A DNA stretch of 63,270 nucleotides, the filler included, from Octopus bimaculoides (taxonomy: Eukaryota): assembly GCF_001194135.2 (NCBI RefSeq). It is 5 parts of 5 records of this genome, joined end to end, with 100 filler letters (N's around TTAATTAATTAA, not from the genome) between each part and the next. Parts side by side here need not be neighbours in the genome. Positions count along the whole stretch, not along the records: positions 52,108 to 63,270 come from NC_068999.1; 4 more parts are not named here. One strand, 5' to 3'. The position numbers and the translations under genes were made by a program. The notes beneath the pieces are model-generated. The model did not search any database. It saw only the letters and a list, made by a program, of their open reading frames with translations, and was not told the origin of the DNA. This document shows positions 52,002 through 63,270 of this stretch, in pieces. Each line of letters begins with the position of its first letter. The stretch's first letter is position 1.

Positions 52002-52109
52002 TGAATANNNNNNNNNNNNNNNNNNNNNNNNNNNNNNNNNNNNNNNNNNNNTTAATTAATTAANNNNNNNNNNNNNNNNNNNNNNNNNNNNNNNNNNNNN
52101 NNNNNNNAC

Positions 52110-52830
52110 GGTTTAAAGAAAATTTCGGCATAAAATCAAGGACAATTTCCGGAGAAGAACTAATAAATCCCGTTGTAATAAAGAACTCATTCTCTGATTT
52201 TTTTTTAAAATCCCCAAAATACTCTCCTCAAGATATTTTTAATTGCGATGAAACAGTCTTATATAAATGTCCTCCCAAAAGTACACTGGTTCTCAACACA
52301 GAAGAACAAGCCTCGGGAATATTTTCAAAAGATCGCATTTCAATACTTTCTGTGTGAATAGAACTGGTGGGAAAACAATGCCTCTTATAATCGGTAAATT
52401 CAAATCTCCGCAGGGTTTTAAGGATATTTACATGGAAGCTTTGGGACTAGAATATACTCATAGTGGAAAATCTTGGATGACTGGTTTTATAATTAGCGAT
52501 TGGTTGAAAAGGCTTAATGAAACATGGTTACATATAATAGGAAAATACTTCTTTTGCTCGACAATACTCGACATTGCATCGATATCAATTTGAGCAATAT
52601 AGAACTACATTATTTGCCGGCGAATTGCACATCAAAAATACAGCCTATTAATGAAGGTGTTATACATTCTTTTAAACCCTCTTACAGAAAATTTTCTTAA
52701 GGAATTTAAGTATGATAAACGAGGAAGATATTAATTTCATTGATCAGATTAAGAAAATCAAGTTATTCAATGCTCTTATAATTGTGCCATGGGATTCCGT
52801 TCCGGTCGATACAATAAAAAATTCAGTGTT
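52110..52830 (+). mobile_element. Tigger/pogo (CENP-B-like DDE_1) transposase fragment
   Basis: DIFNCDETV.., FCVNRTGG..PLIIGKFKSPQGFK, YTHSGKSWMT..IISDWL, LDN..H.., YLPANCTSKIQP..EGVIHSFK. Confidence 0.85.
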
Positions 52831-53177
52831 ACTGTGATAAAGTTTGGCAGATAAGGAAACCACAGAGTGTTTTATGCTCTGAGGTTTTGGCGTCTACTTC
52901 ACAAAAGCCCAGCAAGTTAAAGAGGTATTTACAAACGAAGCATCCCAGTTCAATAAATAGAGATGTCGACTTCTTCAGACGCGAAGCCTACAGATTGACG
53001 AAATCCAGACTTGATGACACGGAACATTTACGGTTGGTTTGAAAGCGTCCTACGAGGTTTCAGGGATAAAAGCTGTTGTGAAAAAGCCTCACAAAATCGG
53101 CTAAGAGTTTATATTGCCTTGCTGCAAAGATATCATATTGAATGTACTAGGAAGTTCTGAACTTCAGAAGCTGAAGC

Positions 53178-53735
53178 GTGTCTCTCTCCCTAATAGTAAA
53201 CAGGCAAATAAATGACCTGTCTGATAACATTCTATCGCAGTTGATCTCTAGGCGTCACAATTCACTTTTGAATTTTTTCGCGATCCAGCTTGATAAAACG
53301 ACAGATGTTTCCAACATAGCCCAACTTTGCGCCTATGTACGTTATGCACATAACAATCACCTGGAGGACGAATTCCTGTTTTGCGAAACCCTCAGCACCA
53401 AAACAACCGCAAGAGAAACATTTAACAAAGTGGACAAATTTTTTGAGGCACATGGTATCAACTGGGATCATGTCATTGACGTGTGCACCGATGGCGCTCC
53501 GGAGATACTCGGCTGCCGTTCCAGTTTTCAGACTTTGGTGAAAGAAAATTCCCCAACTGCTTTTGGTATACACTGCACGATTTATCGACAAGCACTCATA
53601 GTGAAAACCATGCCTGATGAGTGATTACAACAGTGAACTTCATCAAACCGAATGCACTCATCTCCTATCTGTTTGCCGAGTTGTGCAAAGAAAGTGATTC
53701 TGAATTCGAAACACTCGAAAGTCATCCCACAAGTG
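53178..53735 (+). mobile_element. hAT (Buster/ZBED5-like) transposase catalytic-region fragment
   Basis: FAIQLDKTTDVSNIAQLCAYVRY..DEFLFCETL..VCTDGA..G..SSFQTLVK..HCTIYRQAL. Confidence 0.9.
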
Positions 53736-54189
53736 AGATGGGTTTGGAGATGGGTTCGTAGTACCTTGGGCAGGTGTATAAGTGTATTCTGCTAATGCCT
53801 CGGGTCGACCAAAGCCATGTGAGAGGATTTGGTAACCGGAAACTGAAAGAGGACCGTTATATATATATATATATATACATACATATATAAATGTATGTGT
53901 TTTTTCCAGTGTTTACAAATAACGCGAAAAAATACAGTCACCAGGGTAGCAAAAATTCACACAAGTAACAAGGATGTAACAATCTTTCTTTAAAAAGGTA
54001 GAGACTCCAGGTTTAGGTGAAATGTTTTGTATAATATAGATAAATAAATAGATGGAGTTAAACGCAGGTGTTATTCAAATTCATTTACTTCCGACATATG
54101 TTTCGAAGACAACATTGGTATTATTCCAGAAGGAATAAAATGGTGACAGACGGACAGACACATAGATAGATAGAAAGATAGATAGATAG

Positions 54190-54466
54190 ATAACTTTCTT
54201 TATTGGCCACACAGAGGGGACAAATACAAATGTAGAGCTTTTCTTTGTGAAAATGAAAAACAAAAAGGTAAAAATTGAGAAAAAAATAGTAAAATTCCGA
54301 TCAAAAGGGATCGGAAAAAGAAAAGACGATCAAAAGGGATCGTGTGTCACTGAAGAATTTTAAAAATGTAAAGAGCAAGATTAGGTTTATCCGTGGAAAG
54401 AAAAGCCTACGGAAAAGACCACGGTAACCTCAGGCAAGGAAGGATGAAACACATGAGAGCAAAGTG

Positions 54467-54498
<32 letters not shown>

Positions 54499-55030
54499 TC
54501 GATTTACAGGTTCATGCTCAAAATGGTTTCGTCATTCGCACGCACCATCTTTGCTACATTCACCCACCTTTTTTTGAAACTTTCACGAGACAAAAACTGT
54601 CTCTCCATTCTCACCTTCCTTTTCAAGTGGTACTTGAAAAAGTTGATGAGAGATTGGCCAGAGAGGTAAGTGTTTGTCTCTAATCCTTTCGCTAGAGTCC
54701 ACCACACACATTCTTTCACCATGGCCACCAGTACGATGAAGACTGCTTTGCCTTCCCGGTTGAGGGAAGTGGCGGAGCAATTGTCACGATAGACTAGGCC
54801 GACAGGCTAACACGTCCCACACGTGACAGCAGCCTTTGGGCATAAGCCCACAGGTCCGAAATGGTTGGACACTGCACGAGTGCGTGCAGAACGGTTTCGT
54901 CGCTCTGACCGCATCTTGGGCAAGTCGGTCCGGTGTGTCTCGAACCGTGCTTGTAGAGCTTATCCCGAGTAGGTAATGATTCTCGAGAGCACTGCCAGGC
55001 CAGGGATCTCTGGTGATTGTCCATAGGTCC
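54190..55030 (-). mobile_element. L1/Tx1-clade LINE 3' end (zf-RVT C-terminus plus 3'UTR)
   Basis: LAWQCSRESLPTRDKLYKHG..CPRCGQSDETVLHALVQC..LW; KECVWW..FFKYHLKRKVRMER..FKKRW; stop at 54504. The 3'UTR ends in AATAAAGAAA at about 54195, next to a (TATC)n tract. Confidence 0.85.
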
Positions 55031-57290
55031 CGGCCCGAATTAATTAACAAAGGTAACATTTTCATTAACGATTTAACTTTTAAGTTAACTTTGAAAATCA
55101 TTATCGGGCTAATTAACTACCGTTACATTTAGCTTCCATTTACTCAAATCCGTAAATCCAAAAATTTTATAAAAACCGGTGAACATTTAAAAGTTTCTAT
55201 TGTTTTCAGATTGTCTTAGCATATTCAATATTGTACGCATCGTTCTTTCAGCAACAATATAACGCTACTTATTATCATAAAAAAACTTGTAGGACCTCGT
55301 TTGGCCCTGCCTGGATTTGAAACCAAATCCACCCGCGTGCTGCTTGCAAATACAGCGAGAAATTTCTTTGTCTTGTCAAGAGGGAACAATGATTGATGGG
55401 TTTCCACTTGATCCGTGACCTCGCTGAGGTGGATGTCAACAGAGAATTCTATAAAGTGGAAGAAATTAATGGAAGGAAAAAAGTTGGTAAATATTTCGGT
55501 GTGAACGCAAATAGCAGTTACTTGGTAGCAGGGCATGCTAGAAACAGCAGCCAAATCTTTCCTTTTCTGGAAAAAGGAGCCGTTTACCTGTGATTTCGAT
55601 GTCACATTCGTTGAACGCATGCAAAATAACCTGGAAAAGAAAAAAAGGCCTGCGAAACAAAACTCTCTTGGTGGGAAACGTCGAGGTCCCCACCACCCCT
55701 CCCGCCTTTCTTTTCCAGAAAAATTAGCCTTGCGGCGGTTTTGGATGTCAGATACTTTGAATGCCTCCGAAAAAAACTGTGGAAAAAAATTATTCCACAC
55801 CGAGGTACGAAATATTTACCAAAAGAATAAAATCTTGAGCCTAATATACCTGTATTTTTATTAATTCAAATTAATGTACCTCATCTTGAAAAGTGGCAAA
55901 ATTTTTGTTGGTTGCCACCTGGGATAATTTTTGTAACAAATAAAGCAGGTAAGATGCATTAAGAATTTCAATTTTATTGTTTATCCATAATGTTGTTGCT
56001 TTTACACCTGTTAGTTAAATTTACCTGCCCATAAAAGTTAAATTTACTCAGCAAGATCAGCTAAAGTTACATAACTAAAAACCAGAGGTATATAAAGCAC
56101 CCACTGATAAAATGTCAAATCTGTATGTAAAAAAATTTGCTAAGTTGCAAGCAAATATTTTGGACACCCCTCTTGAACCTGAATAATTCAAAATAACGTG
56201 AACAAATAAGCATTACATTTGACAGATTAATATGAACACTAAAGATGTTTTTAGGTGGGTTTTTTTTCTTACACACACACATAACACGGCTTCGATCGGT
56301 TAGGACTATACGTATGTTACTTTGACATCATCATTCCATAAAATTTGTTTATGGGGAGAAAAATATTGAAAAATATCAATAGATGTGTGAGTGGGAAAGA
56401 AATATGGAGGGGGTTTTGGGATGTGCTAGAAACAACAACCATATCTTCCTTAAATCACACATTTTCCTCTGGAATTATTAACATTTTTTTTTTAAACGTG
56501 AGTTTTAAGTGCGTAGTGATAAAAAAAAGTGGCTGAAATCGTTTTGGACTGGGATTGTTGGGGTGAGGAGTGAAACAAAATAAATTTTCAAAATTCTTTT
56601 CTTTTTTTCGTCAAAAGGTGCCTCTCATTATTCTGAAGNNNNNNNNNNNNNNNNNNNNNNNNNNNNNNNNNNNNNNNNNNNNNNNNNNNNNNNNNNNNNN
56701 NNNNNNNNNNNNNNNNNNNNNNNNNNNNNNNNNNNNNNNNNNNNNNNNNNNNNNNNNNNNNNNNNNNAATTTCATTAGAAAATACCTATTTTCCAGAATG
56801 TTATGAGGGGGGAAATGTCGGGCCCTGTGAATTTTGCAAAATCCCTCTCTTCAACCCATCGAAAAGTTTTTCCAACAAATCTTCACAGGATATAAGCGAT
56901 TATTTGGTGTAAGTTTCCTTAAGAAGTTTCCAAAATTCTGGAAGTTATGAGGCAACAAAGTTTGTGGGGGTATTAAACGCTAGTTGTGCCTTTTTTCAAT
57001 AAAAATTAACTTTAACTTCCGTTACATTTTCAAAGAATTAACGGATTAACGATTAACGAAGTTAACTTTTCGATTAACGGTACCCAGCTCTGGATATATA
57101 TATATCATGATAGATCGCTGACCACTACATTTATATTTTTTTCTCCTTGTTTCTTTCCGTGTTACTTTCAGTTGAAGAGCGTAGGCTCGAAACGTCAAAG
57201 ACTTTCTCTATTCCCGAGCATTAAACTAATACATCCATTTGTTGTTTACACCACCTGTCTTCGTCTGTTGTTTTTTTCGTAAATTCTCCC

Positions 57291-57324
<34 letters not shown>

Positions 57325-59913
57325 ATGCATGACGAGCTTCTTTCAATCAACCAAATCCACTCACGAGGAAGCACGTGGTTGGGGGGGAAAAAAAGACTTA
57401 TCACACAAACACGTCTGCGCCTATAAGAACTACCCAAAAACCTGATTTCCATCCCTTACCCGAAACATTTTTCGCAATAAATTCCGATATCTCGTGAAAA
57501 TTTCATTAAAAACTATATATTTTAAAGAAAATCATTAAAAAAACTTTTTTTATCAAGGTACGGAACACATATCTGCAGTTATGTCCCAAGAAAACTATTT
57601 TAAATAAATTATACATCTTGATTTCTATGCTATATATACAAGATCTCGGTGGTATATTCAAGGGAGTTATGAAAGGTGAAGTCAACCTCGATGGAATTGG
57701 AACTTGATATTTAATTAAATAAACACAACAATGGCATTACTTCTTTGATTGTAAACCTAAAATTACTTAAAACTCAAAATAGAAAACACAAGAAAATTTT
57801 TTGGGGATCTACAGCCACAACCAAAAGAAATCGCTGTATTGGTATTGAATCAAAATGTGGCTGCTACGAACTGTATATGGCTGCTAATCTTGGGATTAGG
57901 TCAACAGCTGTACATAGAAGAAAATGACGAAATCTGTTGAGATTTTTACGAATAAACTTTATTTCTGATTGAGAGCGTTTGAATGTTTATTGTGCTTTGT
58001 GTAACTGAAATAGAGTTACAAATGTTGAGTCTTTAAATGTTATTGAAATAGCATTACGATGTATAATGAGAGAGTTTGGATGTTATTGTTATTAAACTAG
58101 TATTAGAAAAGTTACTGGTAGTCATTGTGTTACTGTGGATCGAAAAATTTATCCACATCCATACAACCATTCTCTCCCCCTTACATTAATAAATGCAAAA
58201 GAATTAAAGATAAGACCTTGAATGTAACTATGATTCTTACTGGAGAAAATCAAAAACAACACCTGGTTTTCCAATTAAAAACTTTGAACGTTTGAATACA
58301 AAAATTCCTTTTCTTTCCCACCCAAAAAGTCACTAAGTGGGAAAAAACAAAACAAAGACCAAACAAGTCAGGTCACACTGATACAAAAGTCACGCCTTCC
58401 CTCTCAAACGTTTTTCTTCTTCCCTTTCCTTTCCTTCACCCNNNNNNNNNNNNNNNNNNNNNNNNNNNNNNNNNNNNNNNNNNNNNNNNNNNNNNNNNNN
58501 NNNNNNNNNNNNNNNNNNNNNNNNNNNNNNNNNNNNNNNNNNNNNNNNNNNNNNNNNNNNNNNNNNNNNNNNNNNNNNNNNNNNNNNNNNNNNNNNNNNN
58601 NNNNNNNNNNNNNNNNNNNNNNNNNNNNNNNNNNNNNNNNNNNNNNNNNNNNNNNNNNNNNNNNNNNNNNNNNNNNNNNNNNNNNNNNNNNNNNNNNNNN
58701 NNNNNNNNNNNNNNNNNNNNNNNNNNNNNNNNNNNNNNNNNNNNNNNNNNNNNNNNNNNNNNNNNNNNNNNNNNNNNNNNNNNNNNNNNNNNNNNNNNNN
58801 NNNNNNNNNNNNNNNNNNNNNNNNNNNNNNNNNNNNNNNNNNNNNNNNNNNNNNNNNNNNNNNNNNNNNNNNNNNNNNNNNNNNNNNNNNNNNNNNNNNN
58901 NNNNNNNNNNNNNNNNNNNNNNNNNNNNNNNNNNNNNNNNNNNNNNNNNNNNNNNNNNNNNNNNNNNNNNNNNNNNNNNNNNNNNNNNNNNNNNNNNNNN
59001 NNNNNNNNNNNNNNNNNNNNNNNNNNNNNNNNNNNNNNNNNNNNNNNNNNNNNNNNNNNNNNNNNNNNNNNNNNNNNNNNNNNNNNNNNNNNNNNNNNNN
59101 NNNNNNNNNNNNNNNNNNNNNNNNNNNNNNNNNNNNNNNNNNNNNNNNNNNNNNNNNNNNNNNNNNNNNNNNNNNNNNNNNNNNNNNNNNNNNNNNNNNN
59201 NNNNNNNNNNNNNNNNNNNNNNNNNNNNNNNNNNNNNNNNNNNNNNNNNNNNNNNNGAATATATCGCTCGTTGTAATTGCTTAGTGCCAGGTTAATTGTA
59301 ATTCCCTTGGCCGATGATGAAACGCATTTTATTTTTATCTTCTTTAATTTTTCCAAGTACCTCGAACTACATTATCAAGTGTTTTCTTTAATAAAAGAAG
59401 AATGGCAGAGTGTTCTACGAGTGATCTTTTAGCTTCAAAAACTATAGTGATGGTTATAAATAGAAAGCGTGGGAAAAACGGGATAGCCACAATTAGAACA
59501 TTTTTTTTTAATAAGGGATGGTCATGATTTGAACGCTTTAAAAAAAAAGGATGGTTTCGGTTGGAATGACTCTAAAGAAAGAGCGACTGTTAGAAAGTCG
59601 CTTGTTTCGTGTATCTGCACATTTTTGCATACTGAGTGAATAAATCGGATTTCGAGAATTTCCAAAAACTTATTTAAAACGTAACAGTCATCTCCCTTGA
59701 TGTGGGAAATGCATAGATACACTGAGTTATCGTGTTGATTCGTCGTTTGATTATTTCTTAGCAATACAGACACTAACCACTTTCCAAGGGTTTTCGAATC
59801 TACCCCATTAACAAATAAGAGGTAATTGTTCCAAGTGATTCTGTAATACAAAAGTATAACTTTACTCTTTGATATATCATACCAGGAAACTGATTCAGGT
59901 CATCTTTGATATA

Positions 59914-60759
59914 ATGACTACTACGGATGCTCAATGTGTAAGTGAATACACAACAGATGATCGTTTTCATCAATCAACTGGGGAGGATTTAATGAAATGT
60001 TTCAATAAATATGACATGACGCATAAAAAGCGAGGTGTCGCTTACATCTTCAACAATGAAAATTTCCAACACTCGGAACTTAAAACTCGACTCGGCTCAT
60101 CAAAAGATGCAGAAGATTTTAAAAAGGCATTAATTAAACTTGGATTCCATAAAGATGATATCAATCTTTATACAGATGCAACAGCTGAAGAAATGTGTGG
60201 CGCTTTGAAACAGTTTGGAAAAAAAAATTCTCATCCTGATCTTGATTGCTTTATTTGTGCAATACTAAGTCACGGTGACTCAGACGATCTTATCTATGGA
60301 TACGACGATGTTGTTAAACTAGACAAATTGCTTTCTTATTTGAGACCCGGTTGTTGTCCATCTTTAACAGGAGTACCTAAATTATTCTTTGTTCAAGCAT
60401 CTCGTGGAAGTAAGATTGATTTTGGGATCGAAAAAACTGATGCTGATTTATTAAGGAATCGAGAAAGGGCACCCAAAATTCCAGTTATGGCAGATATGTT
60501 GGTTGTTTATTCATCGTGTAATGAATATCCTTCTTTCGGAAATAAAGAAGGAGGCTCGTGGTTTATGCAAGCTCTAAGTAAAATTTTAATGAAATATGGC
60601 AACGAGTATGAAATCATGAAACTTTTAACCGCTGTCTCTAACTATGTTGCCTCTTTAGGCTTCCAAAGTTCGGATAATTCGGAATACAATGGCAATAAAC
60701 AAATGCCTCAAATTATGTCGACATTGATTAAAGAACTAAAGTTTCAGTCCAAGAACTAA
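59914..60759 (+). CDS. Caspase-3/7-like (peptidase C14A) protein with catalytic Cys replaced by Ser; predicted inactive pseudo-caspase, 281 aa, intronless CDS
   Basis: Uninterrupted ORF with effector-caspase motifs: RGVAYIFNN, R59-LGS, ILSHG (His120), PKLFFVQASRG (Ser163 at the Cys position), KIPVMADML, GSWFMQAL, KQMPQIMSTLIKEL. First in-frame ATG at 59914; TAA at 60757-60759. Confidence 0.92.
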   Translation: MTTTDAQCVSEYTTDDRFHQSTGEDLMKCFNKYDMTHKKRGVAYIFNNENFQHSELKTRLGSSKDAEDFKKALIKLGFHKDDINLYTDATAEEMCGALKQFGKKNSHPDLDCFICAILSHGDSDDLIYGYDDVVKLDKLLSYLRPGCCPSLTGVPKLFFVQASRGSKIDFGIEKTDADLLRNRERAPKIPVMADMLVVYSSCNEYPSFGNKEGGSWFMQALSKILMKYGNEYEIMKLLTAVSNYVASLGFQSSDNSEYNGNKQMPQIMSTLIKELKFQSKN

Positions 60760-61028
60760 ATGTACCGTTTACTTTAATATACACACTAAAGTTTTATGTA
60801 AATATATGTATACAAATACAAAATGCATGTGCTTTTATATATAATTCCTAGACCTAAAATGTTTAGATAAATGTAACATTTTAAACTAATTATTTTTTAT
60901 AACTGTTAATATGATTCCAATCTTGATTTGGTTTCTTTTTAAGGTGTTTAACTAAACCTATTCCTACTATTTCGTTTTGGGATTTGGTTTTCAAGATTCT
61001 TTAAGTGAGTTCGTGTGTTGAAGCATAC

Positions 61029-61253
61029 ACTGTTGTGTCTGGGGAGAGTCATTCTCTTTTAGTGCCTTATTTCCTTTATTTTTCTAAAATTCTCGTTGCG
61101 TCTTGCAAACTTTTAATAGTTAAAACTATTGAAAAGGTTGCAAGACGCAACGAAACTTTTAGAAAAATAAAGAAGGGAATAAGTGGAAATTTTACAGGTT
61201 AGTGTTAAATTATAAGGCACTAAAAGAGAATGATTCTCCCCAGACACAACAGT
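61029..61253. repeat. Inverted repeat: 42-bp arms (1 mismatch, G.U-compatible), 141-nt spacer, 270 nt after the caspase-like stop
   Basis: 61029-61070 versus the reverse complement of 61212-61253. Confidence 0.9.
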
Positions 61254-61841
61254 ATTCCCTACTATTCTTTATCAAAAGGAATACAAGTGCCCTATTTATT
61301 CACGCACAAACATGCATATACGAAATATACAAACAGAAAATGACTATTTGTGTATGTGTCTGTGTGTGTAAAATGAATATGAATTAGCAAACGAATTACC
61401 ATCCCCAAGTATAACGATCTATATTTCAAACTAATCTTTCTCCCTGAAAATTCAACTGACATTGTCTTATATACAACTAAATATGAACACTATTAAGATA
61501 TAAACAAACGATTGATTACTTATTTGTTTTGATATTTAACCGATTCGCTAACAATAACGAAGTGATATTGAACCAGTGTTTGCGTTGTTATTATTATTAT
61601 TAGCATAATGATCATTGTAAGACAAAAAGTAAAGCTAATTAGCGCTAAAAGAAATATATGACAGGAATATTCATCAAGAAATAAAATACGATGAATTGAA
61701 ATAATTTTAGATTTAGTAAAAGAATTTAAATTCTAGGTGAAAATATATAAGACTAATAAGATACTAAAATTATGATACTGTCTAGAAAAAGAATAATAGC
61801 TATACCATCACATAAATTAAAATTTTAAAACGGTGTGTGTG

Positions 61842-61892
<51 letters not shown>

Positions 61893-62048
61893 AGCCTATG
61901 TAACCTAATGTTACCACGTACGTCTGATGTATTTTAAAGTTATTTAAAGCATAGTATCACTGAATTATTTTCTTTCTATCTTTTAATTGTTCTAATAGTT
62001 TCTTCGTTTGTGCCAAAGTGTTACTCAATTTTACTCGAACCCTTTTCA

Positions 62049-62479
62049 GTACTTTTTGGTTATCTCACTCCCATTAAAACATAGGGTTTTATGAGAAATA
62101 TCGGTACTTTTGGTTATTTCTCTCAACTAAAAAAATTGTTTAACCCTCAAAAAAAAAAATGGAAAAAATTAATAAACATGAAAAGTGAAAAGATAAAACA
62201 TCGTATTGAATCTCATAATATCACACGAAGCTGAAAAAATTAATAAACTTAAAAACTGAAAAAATTAAACATCTTAATGAATCTGATAACATTTTTATAA
62301 CAAATTATACCATGCCTTTTGTGAAGGCCAAACGTCAACATGTTGAAGTACTGAATCAAAAGGATCTAACCCTTTTAATCCAGTCTTTTGTCGCCACATA
62401 AACTCAATTTTTTAGTGGGGTGATAACCCAATTTTTAATGGCAATTTTTTAAAATGGGGATGAGATAACCAAAAAATAC
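62049..62479. mobile_element. Possible MITE bounded by imperfect ~30-bp inverted repeats
   Basis: gtactttttggttatctcactcccattaaaa versus ttttaaaatggggatgagataaccaaaaaatac; internal AT-rich tandem duplication at about 62160-62290. Confidence 0.45.
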
Positions 62480-62831
62480 CCCCTTTTCATTTCGAAATGA
62501 TTAGATACATTAATATATTATTTCCAGAGAAATCAACTCTTGATATTCGAGGCTCTTATCATTCAACTTCGTAAGGACAGGGTGTCCATGACTTACCTTT
62601 ACTATTTGAAAATTTCAGAAAGAAAAAGAGTAACACAAGCAAATTATCTTTTATTAGGACCATCAGAACACTTTCGTGTGGGTTCCATTGGTTGCACACA
62701 ATTTTTTGTTTCTTGTTTTTCTCAAATAGTAAAGATAATTTTATGGACATTCTGTATTTTATGCAGTGAAAAACACAACTCTAGCTGAAGCATGGGAGAC
62801 AACTTATGAAAATACTTGGAGTTTTACGAAT

Positions 62832-62905
62832 GGAATTCCCCTTGTACCACTTAAAGCACAAATGGAATTCCCCTTGTGCTTTCAGTTTTACAAATGGAAT
62901 TCCCC
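62832..62905. promoter_or_regulatory. Three perfect NF-kB consensus sites (GGAATTCCCC = rc GGGGAATTCC) at 32-bp periodicity
   Basis: Sites at 62832-62841, 62864-62873 and 62896-62905 all fit GGGRNNYYCC. Function untested. Confidence 0.45.
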
Positions 62906-63193
62906 TTACAAAAAAATAGCACCAAAATCGGATCTTTATGGTTTGACGGGCAACACTTGTTTTCTTAACGAAACACTTTCAAACTTGGGATACTGGTAGA
63001 ATGTGTCATATAAAACATCTTTTTCTCTTAGCCTTCTTAACAAAAATTACTTCTTAATAAGTTATTTCATGTTAAAGTTGTCGTATTTCTGTAATTTCAA
63101 CCAATCACTGACGTCTATTCAGTTGAATACAGTTAGTGCTGTTCGGTGTCAAGTGTGTTATTCCCTGTTTAATTATATCATTATTCCCTAGTA

Positions 63194-63270
63194 AGGGTTT
63201 AGGGTTCGGGTTTTAGAGTTAGGTTGGGGTTAGGGTTAGGGTTATGAGTTATAGGGTTAGGGTTAAGGTT
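63194..63270 (+). repeat. Degenerate (TTAGGG)n telomere-like tract at the window edge
   Basis: Perfect TTAGGG at 63199, 63230, 63236 and 63257, among variant units. Confidence 0.7.

What the first reader, a model, noticed from the sequence alone, without database searches (positions are those of the whole stretch)
59914..60759. Intact-ORF effector caspase that has lost both its catalytic Cys and a substrate-binding Arg: candidate decoy pseudo-caspase
Seen: a 281-aa stop-free ORF with the caspase-3/7 fold motifs. The nucleophile codon (60400-60402) is TCT (QASRG instead of QACRG). The small-subunit S1 Arg of the S-W-R motif (caspase-3 R207) reads S-F-G, with GGA at 60538-60540. His120 (SHG), R59, Q161 and a linker Asp motif (EKTDAD) are retained, and there is no DED/CARD prodomain. 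Known: Cys, His and the two Args are needed for Asp-specific proteolysis; inactive homologues such as cFLIP and C. elegans CSP-2/CSP-3 regulate active caspases by heterodimerising. Inference: two function-killing changes with no frameshift or stop fit a selected non-catalytic regulator (a dominant-negative partner or IAP sponge) of effector type, although a young pseudogene is possible since each change is one nucleotide.
Basis: partly seen in the sequence, partly recalled or inferred. Interest (0 to 1): 0.82.

Follow-up and report, generated by a model that had tools for sequence, protein, structure and literature searches.

The report
Conserved dead effector caspase in octopus
This octopus gene encodes a full-length caspase-3/7-like protein whose catalytic cysteine has been a serine for at least about 34 million years, so it is an old catalytically dead caspase copy and not a fresh pseudogene, one more example of a known kind of protein.

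Summary
Window 59914-60759 (+) is an intact 281-aa caspase ORF (Pfam Peptidase_C14, E 7.6e-52) that reads QASRG (TCT at 60400-60402) and S-F-G (GGA at 60538-60540). His120, Arg59, Gln161 and the linker IEKTD|A are kept. The window is Octopus bimaculoides chromosome CM046619.1.

The gene ("ps1") sits in a syntenic tandem cluster of caspase genes, each with a single coding exon. The O. vulgaris and O. sinensis orthologues carry the same TCT serine codon, so the loss predates a split of about 34 My. The S1 arginine was lost separately in each lineage (AGA to GGA, and AGA to ATA). A second cluster member lost its Cys independently (AGT), and a third lost its His.

Whole-gene dN/dS is 0.47-0.73. 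That figure is confounded by gene conversion with the neighbouring active copy, and it is about 0.8-0.9 (not significant) in the unconverted C-terminal half. Three other results support continued selection on the protein:
- The ORF is still intact.
- The protein does not evolve faster than a Cys-bearing counterpart.
- Substitutions strongly avoid scaffold positions (4/62 against 18/61, p = 9e-4).

The best reading is a retained non-catalytic pseudo-caspase. Its regulatory mechanism is untested. It is a new member of a known kind and of moderate interest.

The parts
59914..60759 (+). Complete single-exon CDS, stop codon included, of the 281-aa pseudo-caspase ('ps1'). It lies at O. bimaculoides CM046619.1:21,783,651-21,784,496.
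   Evidence: AF2 model pLDDT 83.9. Foldseek best matches are caspase-7 and caspase-3, TM 0.94, rmsd 1.4 A.
60400..60402 (+). TCT, Ser163, in place of the catalytic Cys (QASRG).
   Evidence: The same TCT is present in the O. vulgaris and O. sinensis orthologues, and the Cys-bearing paralogues have TGT.
60538..60540 (+). GGA, Gly209, in place of the small-subunit S1 Arg (caspase-3 R207).
   Evidence: The active paralogues have AGA and the O. vulgaris/sinensis orthologues have ATA (Ile), so the two losses are independent one-step changes.
60271..60273 (+). CAC, His120 (SHG), the retained catalytic-dyad His.
60088..60090 (+). CGA, Arg59, the retained large-subunit S1 Arg (caspase-3 R64).
60394..60396 (+). 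CAA, Gln161. It is retained here but is Glu in the O. vulgaris/sinensis orthologues and in ps2.
60427..60441 (+). I-E-K-T-D176, the putative inter-subunit linker cleavage site (cut before Ala177). It lies at the start of the disordered linker 174-189.
   Evidence: The motif is conserved in all three ps1 orthologues and in the active paralogues. The linker has low pLDDT in the model. Cleavage itself is inferred and was not tested.
60709..60744 (+). QIMSTLIKELKF (aa 266-277), the C-terminal beta-strand that forms the dimer interface in effector caspases. It is nearly identical to the active neighbours.
   Evidence: Alignments; strand E266-269 in the model. The interface role is inferred from caspase-3/7 structures.
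59860..59913 (+). Conserved 5' leader with a possible 3' splice site (..ataccAG|g at 59884-59885). The coding part is a single exon.
   Evidence: The sequence is. The upstream 650 nt aligns with O. vulgaris at 87.7% identity. The splice site is an inference; no RNA data were available.

Best explanation
Window 59914-60759 is an old, retained, catalytically dead paralogue of an effector (caspase-3/7-like) caspase, that is, a pseudo-caspase.

Shown here:
- It is one of five caspase genes, each with a single coding exon, in a tandem cluster. The gene order is the same for the four members placed in O. bimaculoides and O. vulgaris, and for the part of the cluster fetched in O. sinensis.
- The nucleophile Cys became Ser (TGT to TCT) before these species split about 34 Mya.
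- After that, the S1 pocket decayed independently in each lineage (Arg209 to Gly or Ile, Gln161 to Glu).
- The rest of the caspase scaffold, the linker Asp site and the dimer-interface strand stayed under purifying selection.

Inferred mechanism:
- The protein folds like a procaspase-3/7 protomer and cannot cleave after Asp.
- It acts through protein-protein contacts. It may pair through the conserved interface strand with the neighbouring Cys-bearing paralogues (about 70% identical). It may also compete with them for the upstream caspase that cuts the IEKTD|A linker.
- Either route would set the threshold of caspase activity.
- Whether it damps activity (as cFLIP at high dose does) or enhances it (as Aedes CASPS18 does) is unknown.
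For: Identity and dead active site.

Age and orthology:
- The TCT codon is the same in three species.
- Gene order is conserved: ps1, actA, actB, ps2 at CM046619.1 21.78-21.84 Mb and at OX597832.1 7.04-7.11 Mb.
- ps1 is monophyletic in the unconverted C-terminal half (100%; 81% with L010 added).
- The split is dated at about 34 Mya.

Not neutral decay:
- Alignable non-coding flanks carry 25 indels in 2,980 nt, 72% of them not multiples of three. The CDS has only two 3-nt indels, giving P(no frameshift) = 0.006.
- P(no stop codon | 90 random substitutions) = 0.023.
- Whole-gene dN/dS is 0.47-0.73.
- Since the split, amino-acid differences hit 4 of 62 columns invariant among the six Cys-bearing copies against 18 of 61 variable columns in the unconverted half (p = 9e-4). 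For the whole gene the counts are 10/136 against 41/138 (p = 2e-6). Two of the four hits at invariant columns are the pocket residues Gln161 and Arg209.
- There is no rate acceleration relative to the Cys-bearing probable orthologue L010: 24 against 27 unique changes.
- ps1 departs from 9-12% of the positions invariant in active copies. The active copies depart from each other at 11.5-15.7%.

The pattern recurs:
- ps2 made an independent Cys to Ser change with a different codon (AGT), and it groups with actB.
- Ser is the commonest replacement at this site among relatives, 19 of 27 non-Cys domains.

Possible expression: the O. sinensis orthologue A0A7E6FHF5 is listed among proteins identified in O. 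vulgaris skin mucus (PMC11431876, Suppl. S6).

Precedents for regulatory dead caspases: PMC7586951 for cFLIP; PMC4840389 and PMC3141678 for CASPS18.
Against: - In the only region free of gene conversion (alignment columns 171 to the end), dN/dS is 0.78-0.90 and not significantly below 1.
- The overall CDS divergence (p = 0.107) is no lower than that of the alignable flanks (0.094).
- Gene conversion with the active neighbour actA has overwritten much of the large subunit. The O. vulgaris/sinensis ps1 and actA copies group together at 95-98%, and O. vulgaris ps1 and actA are identical over columns 122-166. This could both repair the ORF and mimic constraint.
- No transcript contig encoding ps1 exists in the collection searched.
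- The proteome listing cannot be tied to unique peptides, and ps1 shares long identical stretches with actA.
- As I recall, engineered caspase-7 dimers with one dead protomer keep the other site active, so simple dominant-negative heterodimerisation is not guaranteed for an effector caspase. No source for this was read here.
- No interaction, cleavage or activity data exist.
Confidence: 0.55

Rival explanations
1. A slowly dying duplicate. The gene has no function of its own. Its ORF stays open because the adjacent active paralogue repeatedly overwrites parts of it by gene conversion, and because 34 My is not long enough to break the rest.
For: - dN/dS is about 0.8-0.9 in the unconverted half.
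- CDS divergence equals flank divergence.
- Conversion tracts are clear.
- For the unconverted 369 nt alone, an intact ORF is not very improbable: P(no stop) = 0.22 and P(no frameshift) is about 0.11 at the flank indel rate.
- No transcript contig was found.
Against: - Substitutions in the unconverted half avoid scaffold-invariant columns (4/62 against 18/61, p = 9e-4). Neutral decay does not predict this.
- The catalytic Ser codon itself has escaped conversion in all three species, although in O. vulgaris a tract ends about 10 codons before it.
- Two further dead paralogues in the cluster, ps2 and the His-lost copy, are also intact in all species.
- There is no rate acceleration relative to L010.
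Confidence: 0.22
2. A functional non-catalytic protein whose role is unrelated to regulating caspases. It could, for example, be a secreted or released binding or scaffold protein in immunity or skin mucus, evolving fast at its surface.
For: - Several caspase-family proteins, including the orthologue's accession, are listed in the O. vulgaris skin-mucus proteome.
- Replacement is very high at variable columns: 18 amino-acid differences against 3 synonymous-only differences in 61 codons. This is typical of conflict or immune genes.
- The trypanosome Cys to Ser pseudopeptidase MCA4 is released extracellularly (PMC3220528).
Against: - The ORF has no obvious signal peptide. This was judged by eye from the N-terminus MTTTDAQCVSEY.. 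and was not tested with a predictor.
- Mucus contains many cytosolic proteins from shed cells.
- The linker Asp site and the dimer strand, which are the caspase-specific contact features, are the parts that are kept.
Confidence: 0.15
3. Ser163 and His120 form a working serine-type dyad, making the protein an active protease with a new, non-Asp specificity.
For: - His120, Gly121 and Arg59 are retained.
- Ser is the favoured replacement in two independent octopus lineages and in many invertebrate homologues.
Against: - From established knowledge, Cys to Ser caspase mutants are standard catalytically inactive controls.
- The pocket residues are not conserved between orthologues (Gly against Ile at 209, Gln against Glu at 161). 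This argues against a conserved new specificity.
Confidence: 0.03
4. The TCT and GGA codons are assembly errors or rare polymorphisms of an ordinary active caspase.
For: Each is a single-nucleotide change from the active codon. GCA_001194135.2 is a re-scaffolding of the original assembly, so it is not an independent sequence of O. bimaculoides.
Against: TCT is present in the independently sequenced O. vulgaris and O. sinensis orthologues. Arg209 is also absent there, replaced by a different codon.
Confidence: 0.01

Closest known systems
cFLIP(L) / CFLAR, the vertebrate pseudo-caspase (PMC7586951)
   Same: It is a caspase-fold paralogue that lacks the catalytic Cys. It arose by duplication of active caspases and is retained long-term. 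It acts by pairing with the active paralogue.
   Different: cFLIP is of initiator type, with tandem DEDs. From my own knowledge, its Cys is replaced by Tyr and its His is also lost. It works in a system where dimerisation itself activates the partner. The octopus protein has a short prodomain and is caspase-3/7-like (best PDB matches). It has Ser for Cys and keeps its His.
Aedes aegypti CASPS18, a 'caspase-like decoy' of the Decay-type effector CASPS19 (Bryant et al. 2010, as cited in PMC3141678 and PMC4840389)
   Same: It is an effector-type, short-prodomain caspase paralogue made by recent gene duplication. It lacks catalytic capacity and is co-retained with an active paralogue.
   Different: Its origin in Diptera is independent. 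CASPS18 has been shown experimentally to enhance its partner, whereas nothing has been tested for the octopus gene. The octopus cluster holds three different dead copies and shows ongoing gene conversion with an active one.
Trypanosoma brucei metacaspase 4 (PMC3220528)
   Same: It belongs to the caspase superfamily (family C14, clan CD by my own knowledge) and is a catalytically inactive homologue. From my own knowledge the nucleophile Cys is replaced by Ser specifically. It interacts with an active paralogue, and it is found outside the cell.
   Different: It is a metacaspase (C14B, Arg/Lys-specific) of a protist. Its homology to ps1 is only distant and its biology is different (a virulence factor).
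C. elegans CSP-2 and CSP-3
   Same: They are caspase homologues without activity that restrain an active caspase by binding it.
   Different: From my own knowledge, CSP-3 is only a small-subunit-like fragment. The octopus protein keeps both subunits and the linker.
'Unusual' bivalve caspases with His or Cys substitutions (PMC7836458), and the unnamed Ser-for-Cys caspase domains of Mytilus edulis, Glandiceps talaboti and several insects
   Same: They are caspase-3/7-like domains from invertebrates, often from lineage-specific expansions, with the catalytic residues replaced. Ser is the commonest replacement. The Mytilus domain even shares the QSRG-plus-Gly combination.
   Different: These are uncharacterised predictions, and many are parts of two- or three-domain proteins. 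There is no evidence that they are orthologous to the octopus gene.

Membership tests
Caspase family (Peptidase C14A) as a homologue | Significant match to the caspase domain over both the p20 and p10 parts. | tested here: met
   Pfam PF00656, E 7.6e-52, profile positions 1-232 of 233. PDB caspase-7, E 4.7e-45. The AF2 model matches caspase-7 at TM 0.94-0.95.
Caspase family (Peptidase C14A) as an active peptidase | A catalytic Cys-His dyad (QACxG Cys and SHG His). | tested here: not met
   His120 is present, but the Cys position is Ser163 (TCT). The protein is therefore a non-peptidase homologue by sequence. Activity was not assayed.
Caspase family (Peptidase C14A) as an active peptidase | An Asp-binding S1 pocket (caspase-3 R64, Q161 and R207). 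| tested here: not met
   Arg59 and Gln161 are present, but the R207 equivalent is Gly209.
Effector (caspase-3/6/7-like) subtype | A short prodomain without CARD, DED or other recruitment domains. | tested here: met
   Only Peptidase_C14 was found. The 39 N-terminal residues have no Pfam match and residues 1-16 are predicted disordered.
Effector (caspase-3/6/7-like) subtype | Closest solved relatives are effector caspases, and an inter-subunit linker with an xExD site is present. | tested here: met
   The top sequence and structure hits are caspase-7, caspase-3, Spodoptera caspase-1 and caspase-6. IEKTD176|A lies in the disordered linker. Cleavage was not tested.
Pseudo-caspase / caspase-like decoy (a functional class) | The loss of a catalytic residue is conserved in orthologues and is not a private lesion. 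| tested here: met
   The TCT Ser codon is present in O. bimaculoides, O. vulgaris and O. sinensis, in syntenic genes.
Pseudo-caspase / caspase-like decoy (a functional class) | The protein remains under selection after the loss. | tested here: inconclusive
   For: the ORF is intact (P about 0.006 x 0.023 under neutrality); substitutions are site-heterogeneous (p = 9e-4 to 2e-6); the rate is not accelerated. Against: omega is 0.8-0.9 (not significant) in the unconverted half, and gene conversion is a confounder.
Pseudo-caspase / caspase-like decoy (a functional class) | The gene is expressed as RNA and protein. | tested here: inconclusive
   The orthologue's accession A0A7E6FHF5 is in the list of identified skin-mucus proteins, but unique peptides could not be found in the part of the supplement that is held. 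There is no transcript contig in the collection.
Pseudo-caspase / caspase-like decoy (a functional class) | It binds an active caspase, or its activator or inhibitor, and changes that protein's activity. | not testable with these tools
   Only indirect evidence exists: the interface strand QIMSTLIKELKF is nearly identical to the active neighbours.
Processed (retro)pseudogene | An intronless copy with disabling lesions, a poly(A) remnant, and no conserved synteny. | tested here: not met
   The CDS is a single exon, but so is the CDS of every cluster member fetched. The ORF is intact and the locus is syntenic in three species. The flanks are conserved. A poly(A) tract or target-site duplication was not searched for specifically.

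The most novel reading that the evidence does not exclude
Octopuses may have evolved a small module in which dead effector-caspase paralogues outnumber the live ones. There are two independent Cys to Ser copies plus one His-lost copy beside two Cys-bearing copies. The copies exchange sequence by gene conversion but never restore the nucleophile. Ser-for-Cys caspases would then be a recurrent class of non-catalytic regulators across invertebrates, or a class of released immune or mucus proteins. The preference for Ser would reflect selection to keep the active-site geometry without chemistry.
Probability: 0.15. Interest if true: 0.7.

Novelty: new member of a known kind. Interest (0 to 1): 0.42.

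Why it matters
Pseudo-caspases are few and are mostly known from vertebrates (cFLIP), nematodes and one mosquito case. A conserved effector-type example in a cephalopod would extend regulation by dead paralogues to lophotrochozoan cell-death or immune pathways. That it has two further dead neighbours makes the case stronger.

It also offers a clean natural experiment. The nucleophile was lost, the S1 pocket then decayed, the scaffold was kept, and gene conversion with an active neighbour continued. This could show how pseudoenzymes are stabilised.

In practice, genome annotations that call this gene and its orthologues 'caspase-3/-7/-1-like' should not be read as counts of active caspases. Caspase hits in octopus proteomic 'biomarker' lists may include dead paralogues.

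Tried and rejected
1. Sequencing error or young pseudogene: rejected, because the TCT codon is shared by three species.
2. Whole-gene dN/dS as proof of selection: rejected as insufficient once gene conversion with actA was found. It was replaced by analysis of the unconverted half, ORF-survival estimates and a site-heterogeneity test.
3. The first AF2 run, with an 18-sequence alignment, gave pLDDT 53.5 and was discarded. The 125-sequence alignment was used instead.
4. Exact-protein look-ups of isoform X2 entries P0002 and P0005 found nothing. The cluster members P0024 and P0025 were used instead.
5. A search for ps1-unique tryptic peptides in the mucus-proteome supplements found none, but the peptide tables are truncated in the held copy.
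6. A literature search for QASRG, EASRG or the UniProt accessions found no paper. The Bryant 2010 paper itself is not held.
7. tblastn for the His-lost copy in the fetched loci found nothing. Its position next to ps1 therefore rests only on the gene table of L003 and the consecutive O. vulgaris accessions.
8. The species of SRR11869386 (L010) could not be identified.
9. The IAP-sponge idea has only weak support. The neo-N-termini after the putative cuts would start with Ala (TTTD|AQCV and EKTD|ADLL). No test was possible, and Asp at position 2 does not match the IAP-binding motifs I recall. The idea is neither adopted nor excluded.
Full report
**1. The observation**

The piece 52108-63270 carries an open reading frame on the + strand from ATG 59914 to TAA 60757-60759, 281 codons. 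It is a caspase beyond doubt:
- Pfam Peptidase_C14 matches residues 40-275 end to end, E 7.6e-52, with no other domain.
- phmmer against all PDB chains gives human caspase-7 and caspase-3 at E about 5e-45 over residues 32-278.
- An AlphaFold2 model built on a 125-sequence alignment has mean pLDDT 83.9. Only the first 16 residues and the inter-subunit linker 174-189 are disordered.
- The model superposes on caspase-7, caspase-3 and caspase-6 and on Spodoptera caspase-1 with TM 0.94-0.95 and rmsd down to 1.4 A.

The printed alignment places Ser163 (TCT, 60400-60402) under the nucleophile Cys of QACRG, and Gly209 (GGA, 60538-60540) under the Arg of the small-subunit SWR motif. His120 (SHG), Arg59, Gln161 and the linker IEKTD176|A are present.

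There is one correction. The Phe in 'S-F-G' is not a change of this gene. All cluster members, the Cys-bearing ones included, have Phe or Tyr at that position.

**2. Where the gene sits**

The exact protein is encoded at Octopus bimaculoides chromosome CM046619.1:21,783,651-21,784,496. The collection lists NCBI, UniRef and EukProt among the sources of this exact protein.

Its closest relatives are all Octopus proteins. I call the window's gene ps1. Look-ups of the neighbours show a tandem cluster of caspase genes, each with a single coding exon.

| Gene | O. bimaculoides CM046619.1 (Mb) | O. vulgaris OX597832.1 (Mb) | Active-site motif |
|---|---|---|---|
| ps1 | 21.784 | 7.111 | QASRG / EASRG |
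| actA | about 21.80 | 7.089 | QACRG |
| actB | 21.822 | 7.062 | QACRG |
| ps2 | 21.837 | 7.040 | EASRG |

In O. sinensis (CM016877.1), ps1 is followed by actA 21 kb downstream.

A fifth member (P0010, P0007, P0030) keeps QACRG but has Cys or Tyr for the catalytic His and has lost both S1 arginines. In O. sinensis a 283-aa caspase gene, the length of P0030, lies just upstream of ps1. Its coding exon was not within the fetched loci.

**3. Is the loss old?**

All three ps1 orthologues have TCT at the nucleophile position, and the Cys-bearing copies have TGT. In the C-terminal half of the gene, which holds the active-site motif, the linker and the small subunit, ps1 of the three species forms a clade. 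Support is 100% bootstrap without L010 and 81% with it. actA, actB and ps2 each form clades too.

[quoted passage not shown] The Cys to Ser change is therefore at least that old. It cannot be an assembly error or a private young lesion.

A short genomic contig from an unidentified, more distant octopod (L010, run SRR11869386) encodes a QACRG, S-F-R protein. Two results tie it to ps1:
- Its 3' flank aligns only with the ps1 loci.
- Its C-terminal half groups with ps1, at 67% bootstrap.

It is probably the still Cys-bearing orthologue, which would bracket the loss. The support is only moderate.

**4. What happened after the loss**

The S1 arginine codon is AGA in all the actA and actB copies (AGG in ps2). 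It is GGA in O. bimaculoides ps1 and ATA (Ile) in O. vulgaris and O. sinensis ps1. These are two different one-step changes, so the arginine was lost independently in each lineage after the split. Gln161 is kept in O. bimaculoides but is Glu in the other two species.

Only four columns are invariant in all six Cys-bearing copies yet carry one and the same different residue in all three ps1 orthologues: IQACRGT became VxASRGS (I>V, C>S, T>S), plus a Lys to Glu change in the L3 loop. Arg209, five residues after that Lys, is also replaced in all three, by Gly or Ile. The picture is a catalytic pocket that was released from constraint and is decaying.

ps2 lost its Cys independently. Its serine codon is AGT, which cannot be reached from TCT in one step without passing through Cys (TGT) or Thr (ACT). 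ps2 also groups with actB and not with ps1.

The non-Cys counts are 19 Ser against 2 Asn, 2 Arg, 2 Thr, 1 Pro and 1 gap. Nine of the 19 are Octopus proteins. The others include predicted proteins of Mytilus edulis, the acorn worm Glandiceps talaboti and several insects.

**5. Is the gene still under selection?**

Whole-gene dN/dS between O. bimaculoides ps1 and its orthologues is 0.47-0.73, depending on the method, and is significantly below 1 by a Fisher test on the NG86 counts (p = 0.001-0.02). This figure cannot be taken at face value, because ps1 and the adjacent active copy actA exchange sequence:
- In alignment columns 76-170 the O. vulgaris/sinensis ps1 and actA copies group together at 95-98% bootstrap.
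- O. vulgaris ps1 and actA are nucleotide-identical over columns 122-166.
- That tract ends about 10 codons before the serine codon.

In the unconverted C-terminal half, dN/dS is 0.78-0.90 and not significant. The whole cluster evolves fast in that region:

| Gene | dN/dS, unconverted C-terminal half |
|---|---|
| ps1 | 0.78-0.90 |
| actA | about 1.0-1.3 |
| ps2 | about 0.9-1.1 |
| actB | 0.2-0.4 |

Only actB is clearly constrained.

Three other lines do point to selection on the protein.

(a) ORF integrity:
- Alignable non-coding flanks between O. bimaculoides and O. vulgaris carry 25 indels in 2,980 nt, 72% of them not multiples of three.
- The 843-nt CDS has two indels, both of exactly 3 nt.
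- At the flank rate, 5.1 frameshifts are expected, so P(0) = 0.006.
- Ninety random substitutions leave the frame free of stops in only 2.3% of simulations.

(b) Rate:
- ps1 has accumulated no more unique amino-acid changes than the Cys-bearing L010 lineage. The counts are 24 against 27 for the whole protein and 10 against 10 for the C-terminal half.
- ps1 departs from positions invariant in active copies (9-12%) no more than active copies depart from each other (11.5-15.7%). ps2 is more divergent, at 16-26%.

(c) Site heterogeneity:
- In the unconverted half, amino-acid differences between the ps1 orthologues fall on 4 of 62 columns invariant among the six Cys-bearing copies, and on 18 of 61 variable columns (p = 9e-4).
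- With a reference set that excludes actA the p-value is 6e-6.
- For the whole gene the counts are 10/136 against 41/138, p = 2e-6.
- Two of the four hits at invariant columns are the pocket residues Gln161 and Arg209.

A neutrally decaying sequence would not spare the scaffold in this way. I conclude that the fold is still maintained while the pocket is not, which is the signature of a pseudoenzyme and not of a pseudogene. Gene conversion and the family's generally high rate keep this short of proof.

**6. Expression**

No transcript-derived contig for ps1 exists in the collection.

The UniProt accession of the O. sinensis orthologue (A0A7E6FHF5) appears, with that of actB, in the InterPro enrichment table of proteins identified in O. 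vulgaris skin mucus (PMC11431876, Supplementary Data S6). I could not find ps1-unique peptides, because the peptide tables are truncated in the held copy. ps1 also shares long identical stretches with actA. I treat this as a hint only.

**7. Mechanism**

Shown:
- The protein has the procaspase-3/7 fold.
- It lacks the nucleophile and one S1 arginine.
- It keeps the linker IEKTD|A motif in all orthologues.
- It keeps the C-terminal strand QIMSTLIKELKF almost identical to actA and actB.

Inferred:
- It cannot cleave after Asp.
- It can probably be cut in its linker by an upstream or neighbouring caspase.
- It can probably pair with the active paralogues, and so tune their activation or activity.

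The decay of the S1 pocket, with different residues in different species, argues against substrate trapping and against a new conserved protease specificity. The direction of regulation is open. cFLIP can inhibit or activate depending on its expression level (10.1101/723718, abstract listed), and Aedes CASPS18 enhances its partner (PMC4840389, PMC3141678). As far as I know, hybrid caspase-7 dimers with one dead protomer remain half-active, so a simple dominant-negative effect is not assured.

**8. Comparison and novelty**

The closest known cases are:
- cFLIP, which is of initiator type with DEDs.
- Aedes CASPS18, an effector-type decoy and the nearest functional analogue.
- C. elegans CSP-2 and CSP-3.
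- At superfamily level, the Cys to Ser pseudopeptidase TbMCA4 (PMC3220528).
- Bivalve caspases with His or Cys substitutions, which have been noted but not studied (PMC7836458).

No paper in the library mentions QASRG or EASRG or the accessions of these octopus proteins.

The finding is a new member of a known kind. The less ordinary aspects are three dead paralogues beside two live ones, two independent Cys to Ser events, and gene conversion that spares the dead codon.

**9. Verdict**

| Reading | Probability |
|---|---|
| Retained non-catalytic caspase partner | about 0.55 |
| Relic kept open by gene conversion | about 0.22 |
| Functional, but not as a caspase regulator | about 0.15 |
| Ser-type active protease | about 0.03 |
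| Assembly error or polymorphism | about 0.01 |

Interest is moderate (0.42).

Noticed in passing
L007 3001-3888 (O. bimaculoides ps2) and L008 3001-3849 (O. vulgaris ps2): A second cluster member, about 53 kb downstream of the window's gene, lost the catalytic Cys independently. It reads EASRG with codon AGT, against TCT in ps1, and keeps the S1 Arg. It groups with the active copy actB. Its dN/dS is about 1, yet its ORF is intact in all three species (the O. sinensis copy P0014 was seen as protein only).
   Followed up: partly
Proteins P0010 (O. bimaculoides), P0007 (O. vulgaris), P0030 (O. sinensis); the locus is upstream of ps1 and was not fetched: A third dead paralogue keeps QACRG but has Cys, Cys and Tyr respectively in place of the catalytic His. 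It has also lost both S1 arginines. Dead copies therefore outnumber Cys-bearing copies in the cluster, three to two.
   Followed up: partly
L003 10001-10840 against 31275-32102; L004 against L006; window CDS against L005 11020-11850: There is gene conversion between ps1 and the adjacent active copy actA. In O. vulgaris the two are 100% identical over alignment columns 122-166, and the tract stops about 10 codons before the Ser/Cys codon. O. bimaculoides has a different, older tract covering alignment columns 31-90. Some exchange seems to run from the dead copy into the active one.
   Followed up: yes
L003 (O. sinensis), proteins P0002 and P0024: RefSeq 'isoform X2' of the O. sinensis orthologue is the ps1 protein with its last four residues (QSKN) replaced by those of actA (EPKK), which lies 21 kb downstream. 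There is no canonical GT at the implied junction, so this is probably a gene-model artefact.
   Followed up: partly
L005 3001-3078: A duplicated fragment of the N-terminal coding sequence (26 aa, 73% identical to the ps1 N-terminus) lies 8 kb upstream of O. bimaculoides actA. It appears to serve as the alternative first coding exon of isoform X1.
   Followed up: no
L010 (Logan contig SRR11869386_924746), CDS 607-1443: This is a genomic contig from an unidentified, more distant octopod. It encodes a Cys-bearing (QACRG, S-F-R) protein. Its 3' flank matches only the ps1 loci, while its 5' flank aligns furthest with actA. It is probably the active orthologue or a pre-loss state of ps1.
   Followed up: partly
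Proteins P0046 (Mytilus edulis), P0070 (Glandiceps talaboti), P0045, P0103, P0032, P0048 (insects), and P0019 and P0021 (O. bimaculoides, another chromosome): Ser in place of the catalytic Cys recurs in caspase domains of many invertebrates, often as one domain of a two- or three-domain protein. The Mytilus domain has the same QSRG-plus-Gly combination as the window's gene.
   Followed up: partly
window 52267-52593 (+) and 54794-55024 (-): These are fragments of transposable elements: a DDE_1 (pogo/Tigger-type) transposase piece (E 7e-10) and a reverse-transcriptase zinc-binding (zf-RVT) piece (E 2e-9).
   Followed up: partly
window 56639-56767 and 58442-59256: Two assembly gaps (runs of N). 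The second ends only about 660 bp upstream of the start codon, so part of the promoter or 5' region of the gene is unresolved in this assembly.
   Followed up: no
window 63194-63270: A degenerate array of about 12 copies of AGGGTT, a permutation of the telomere-type TTAGGG hexamer, lies at the edge of the piece (71% matches).
   Followed up: no
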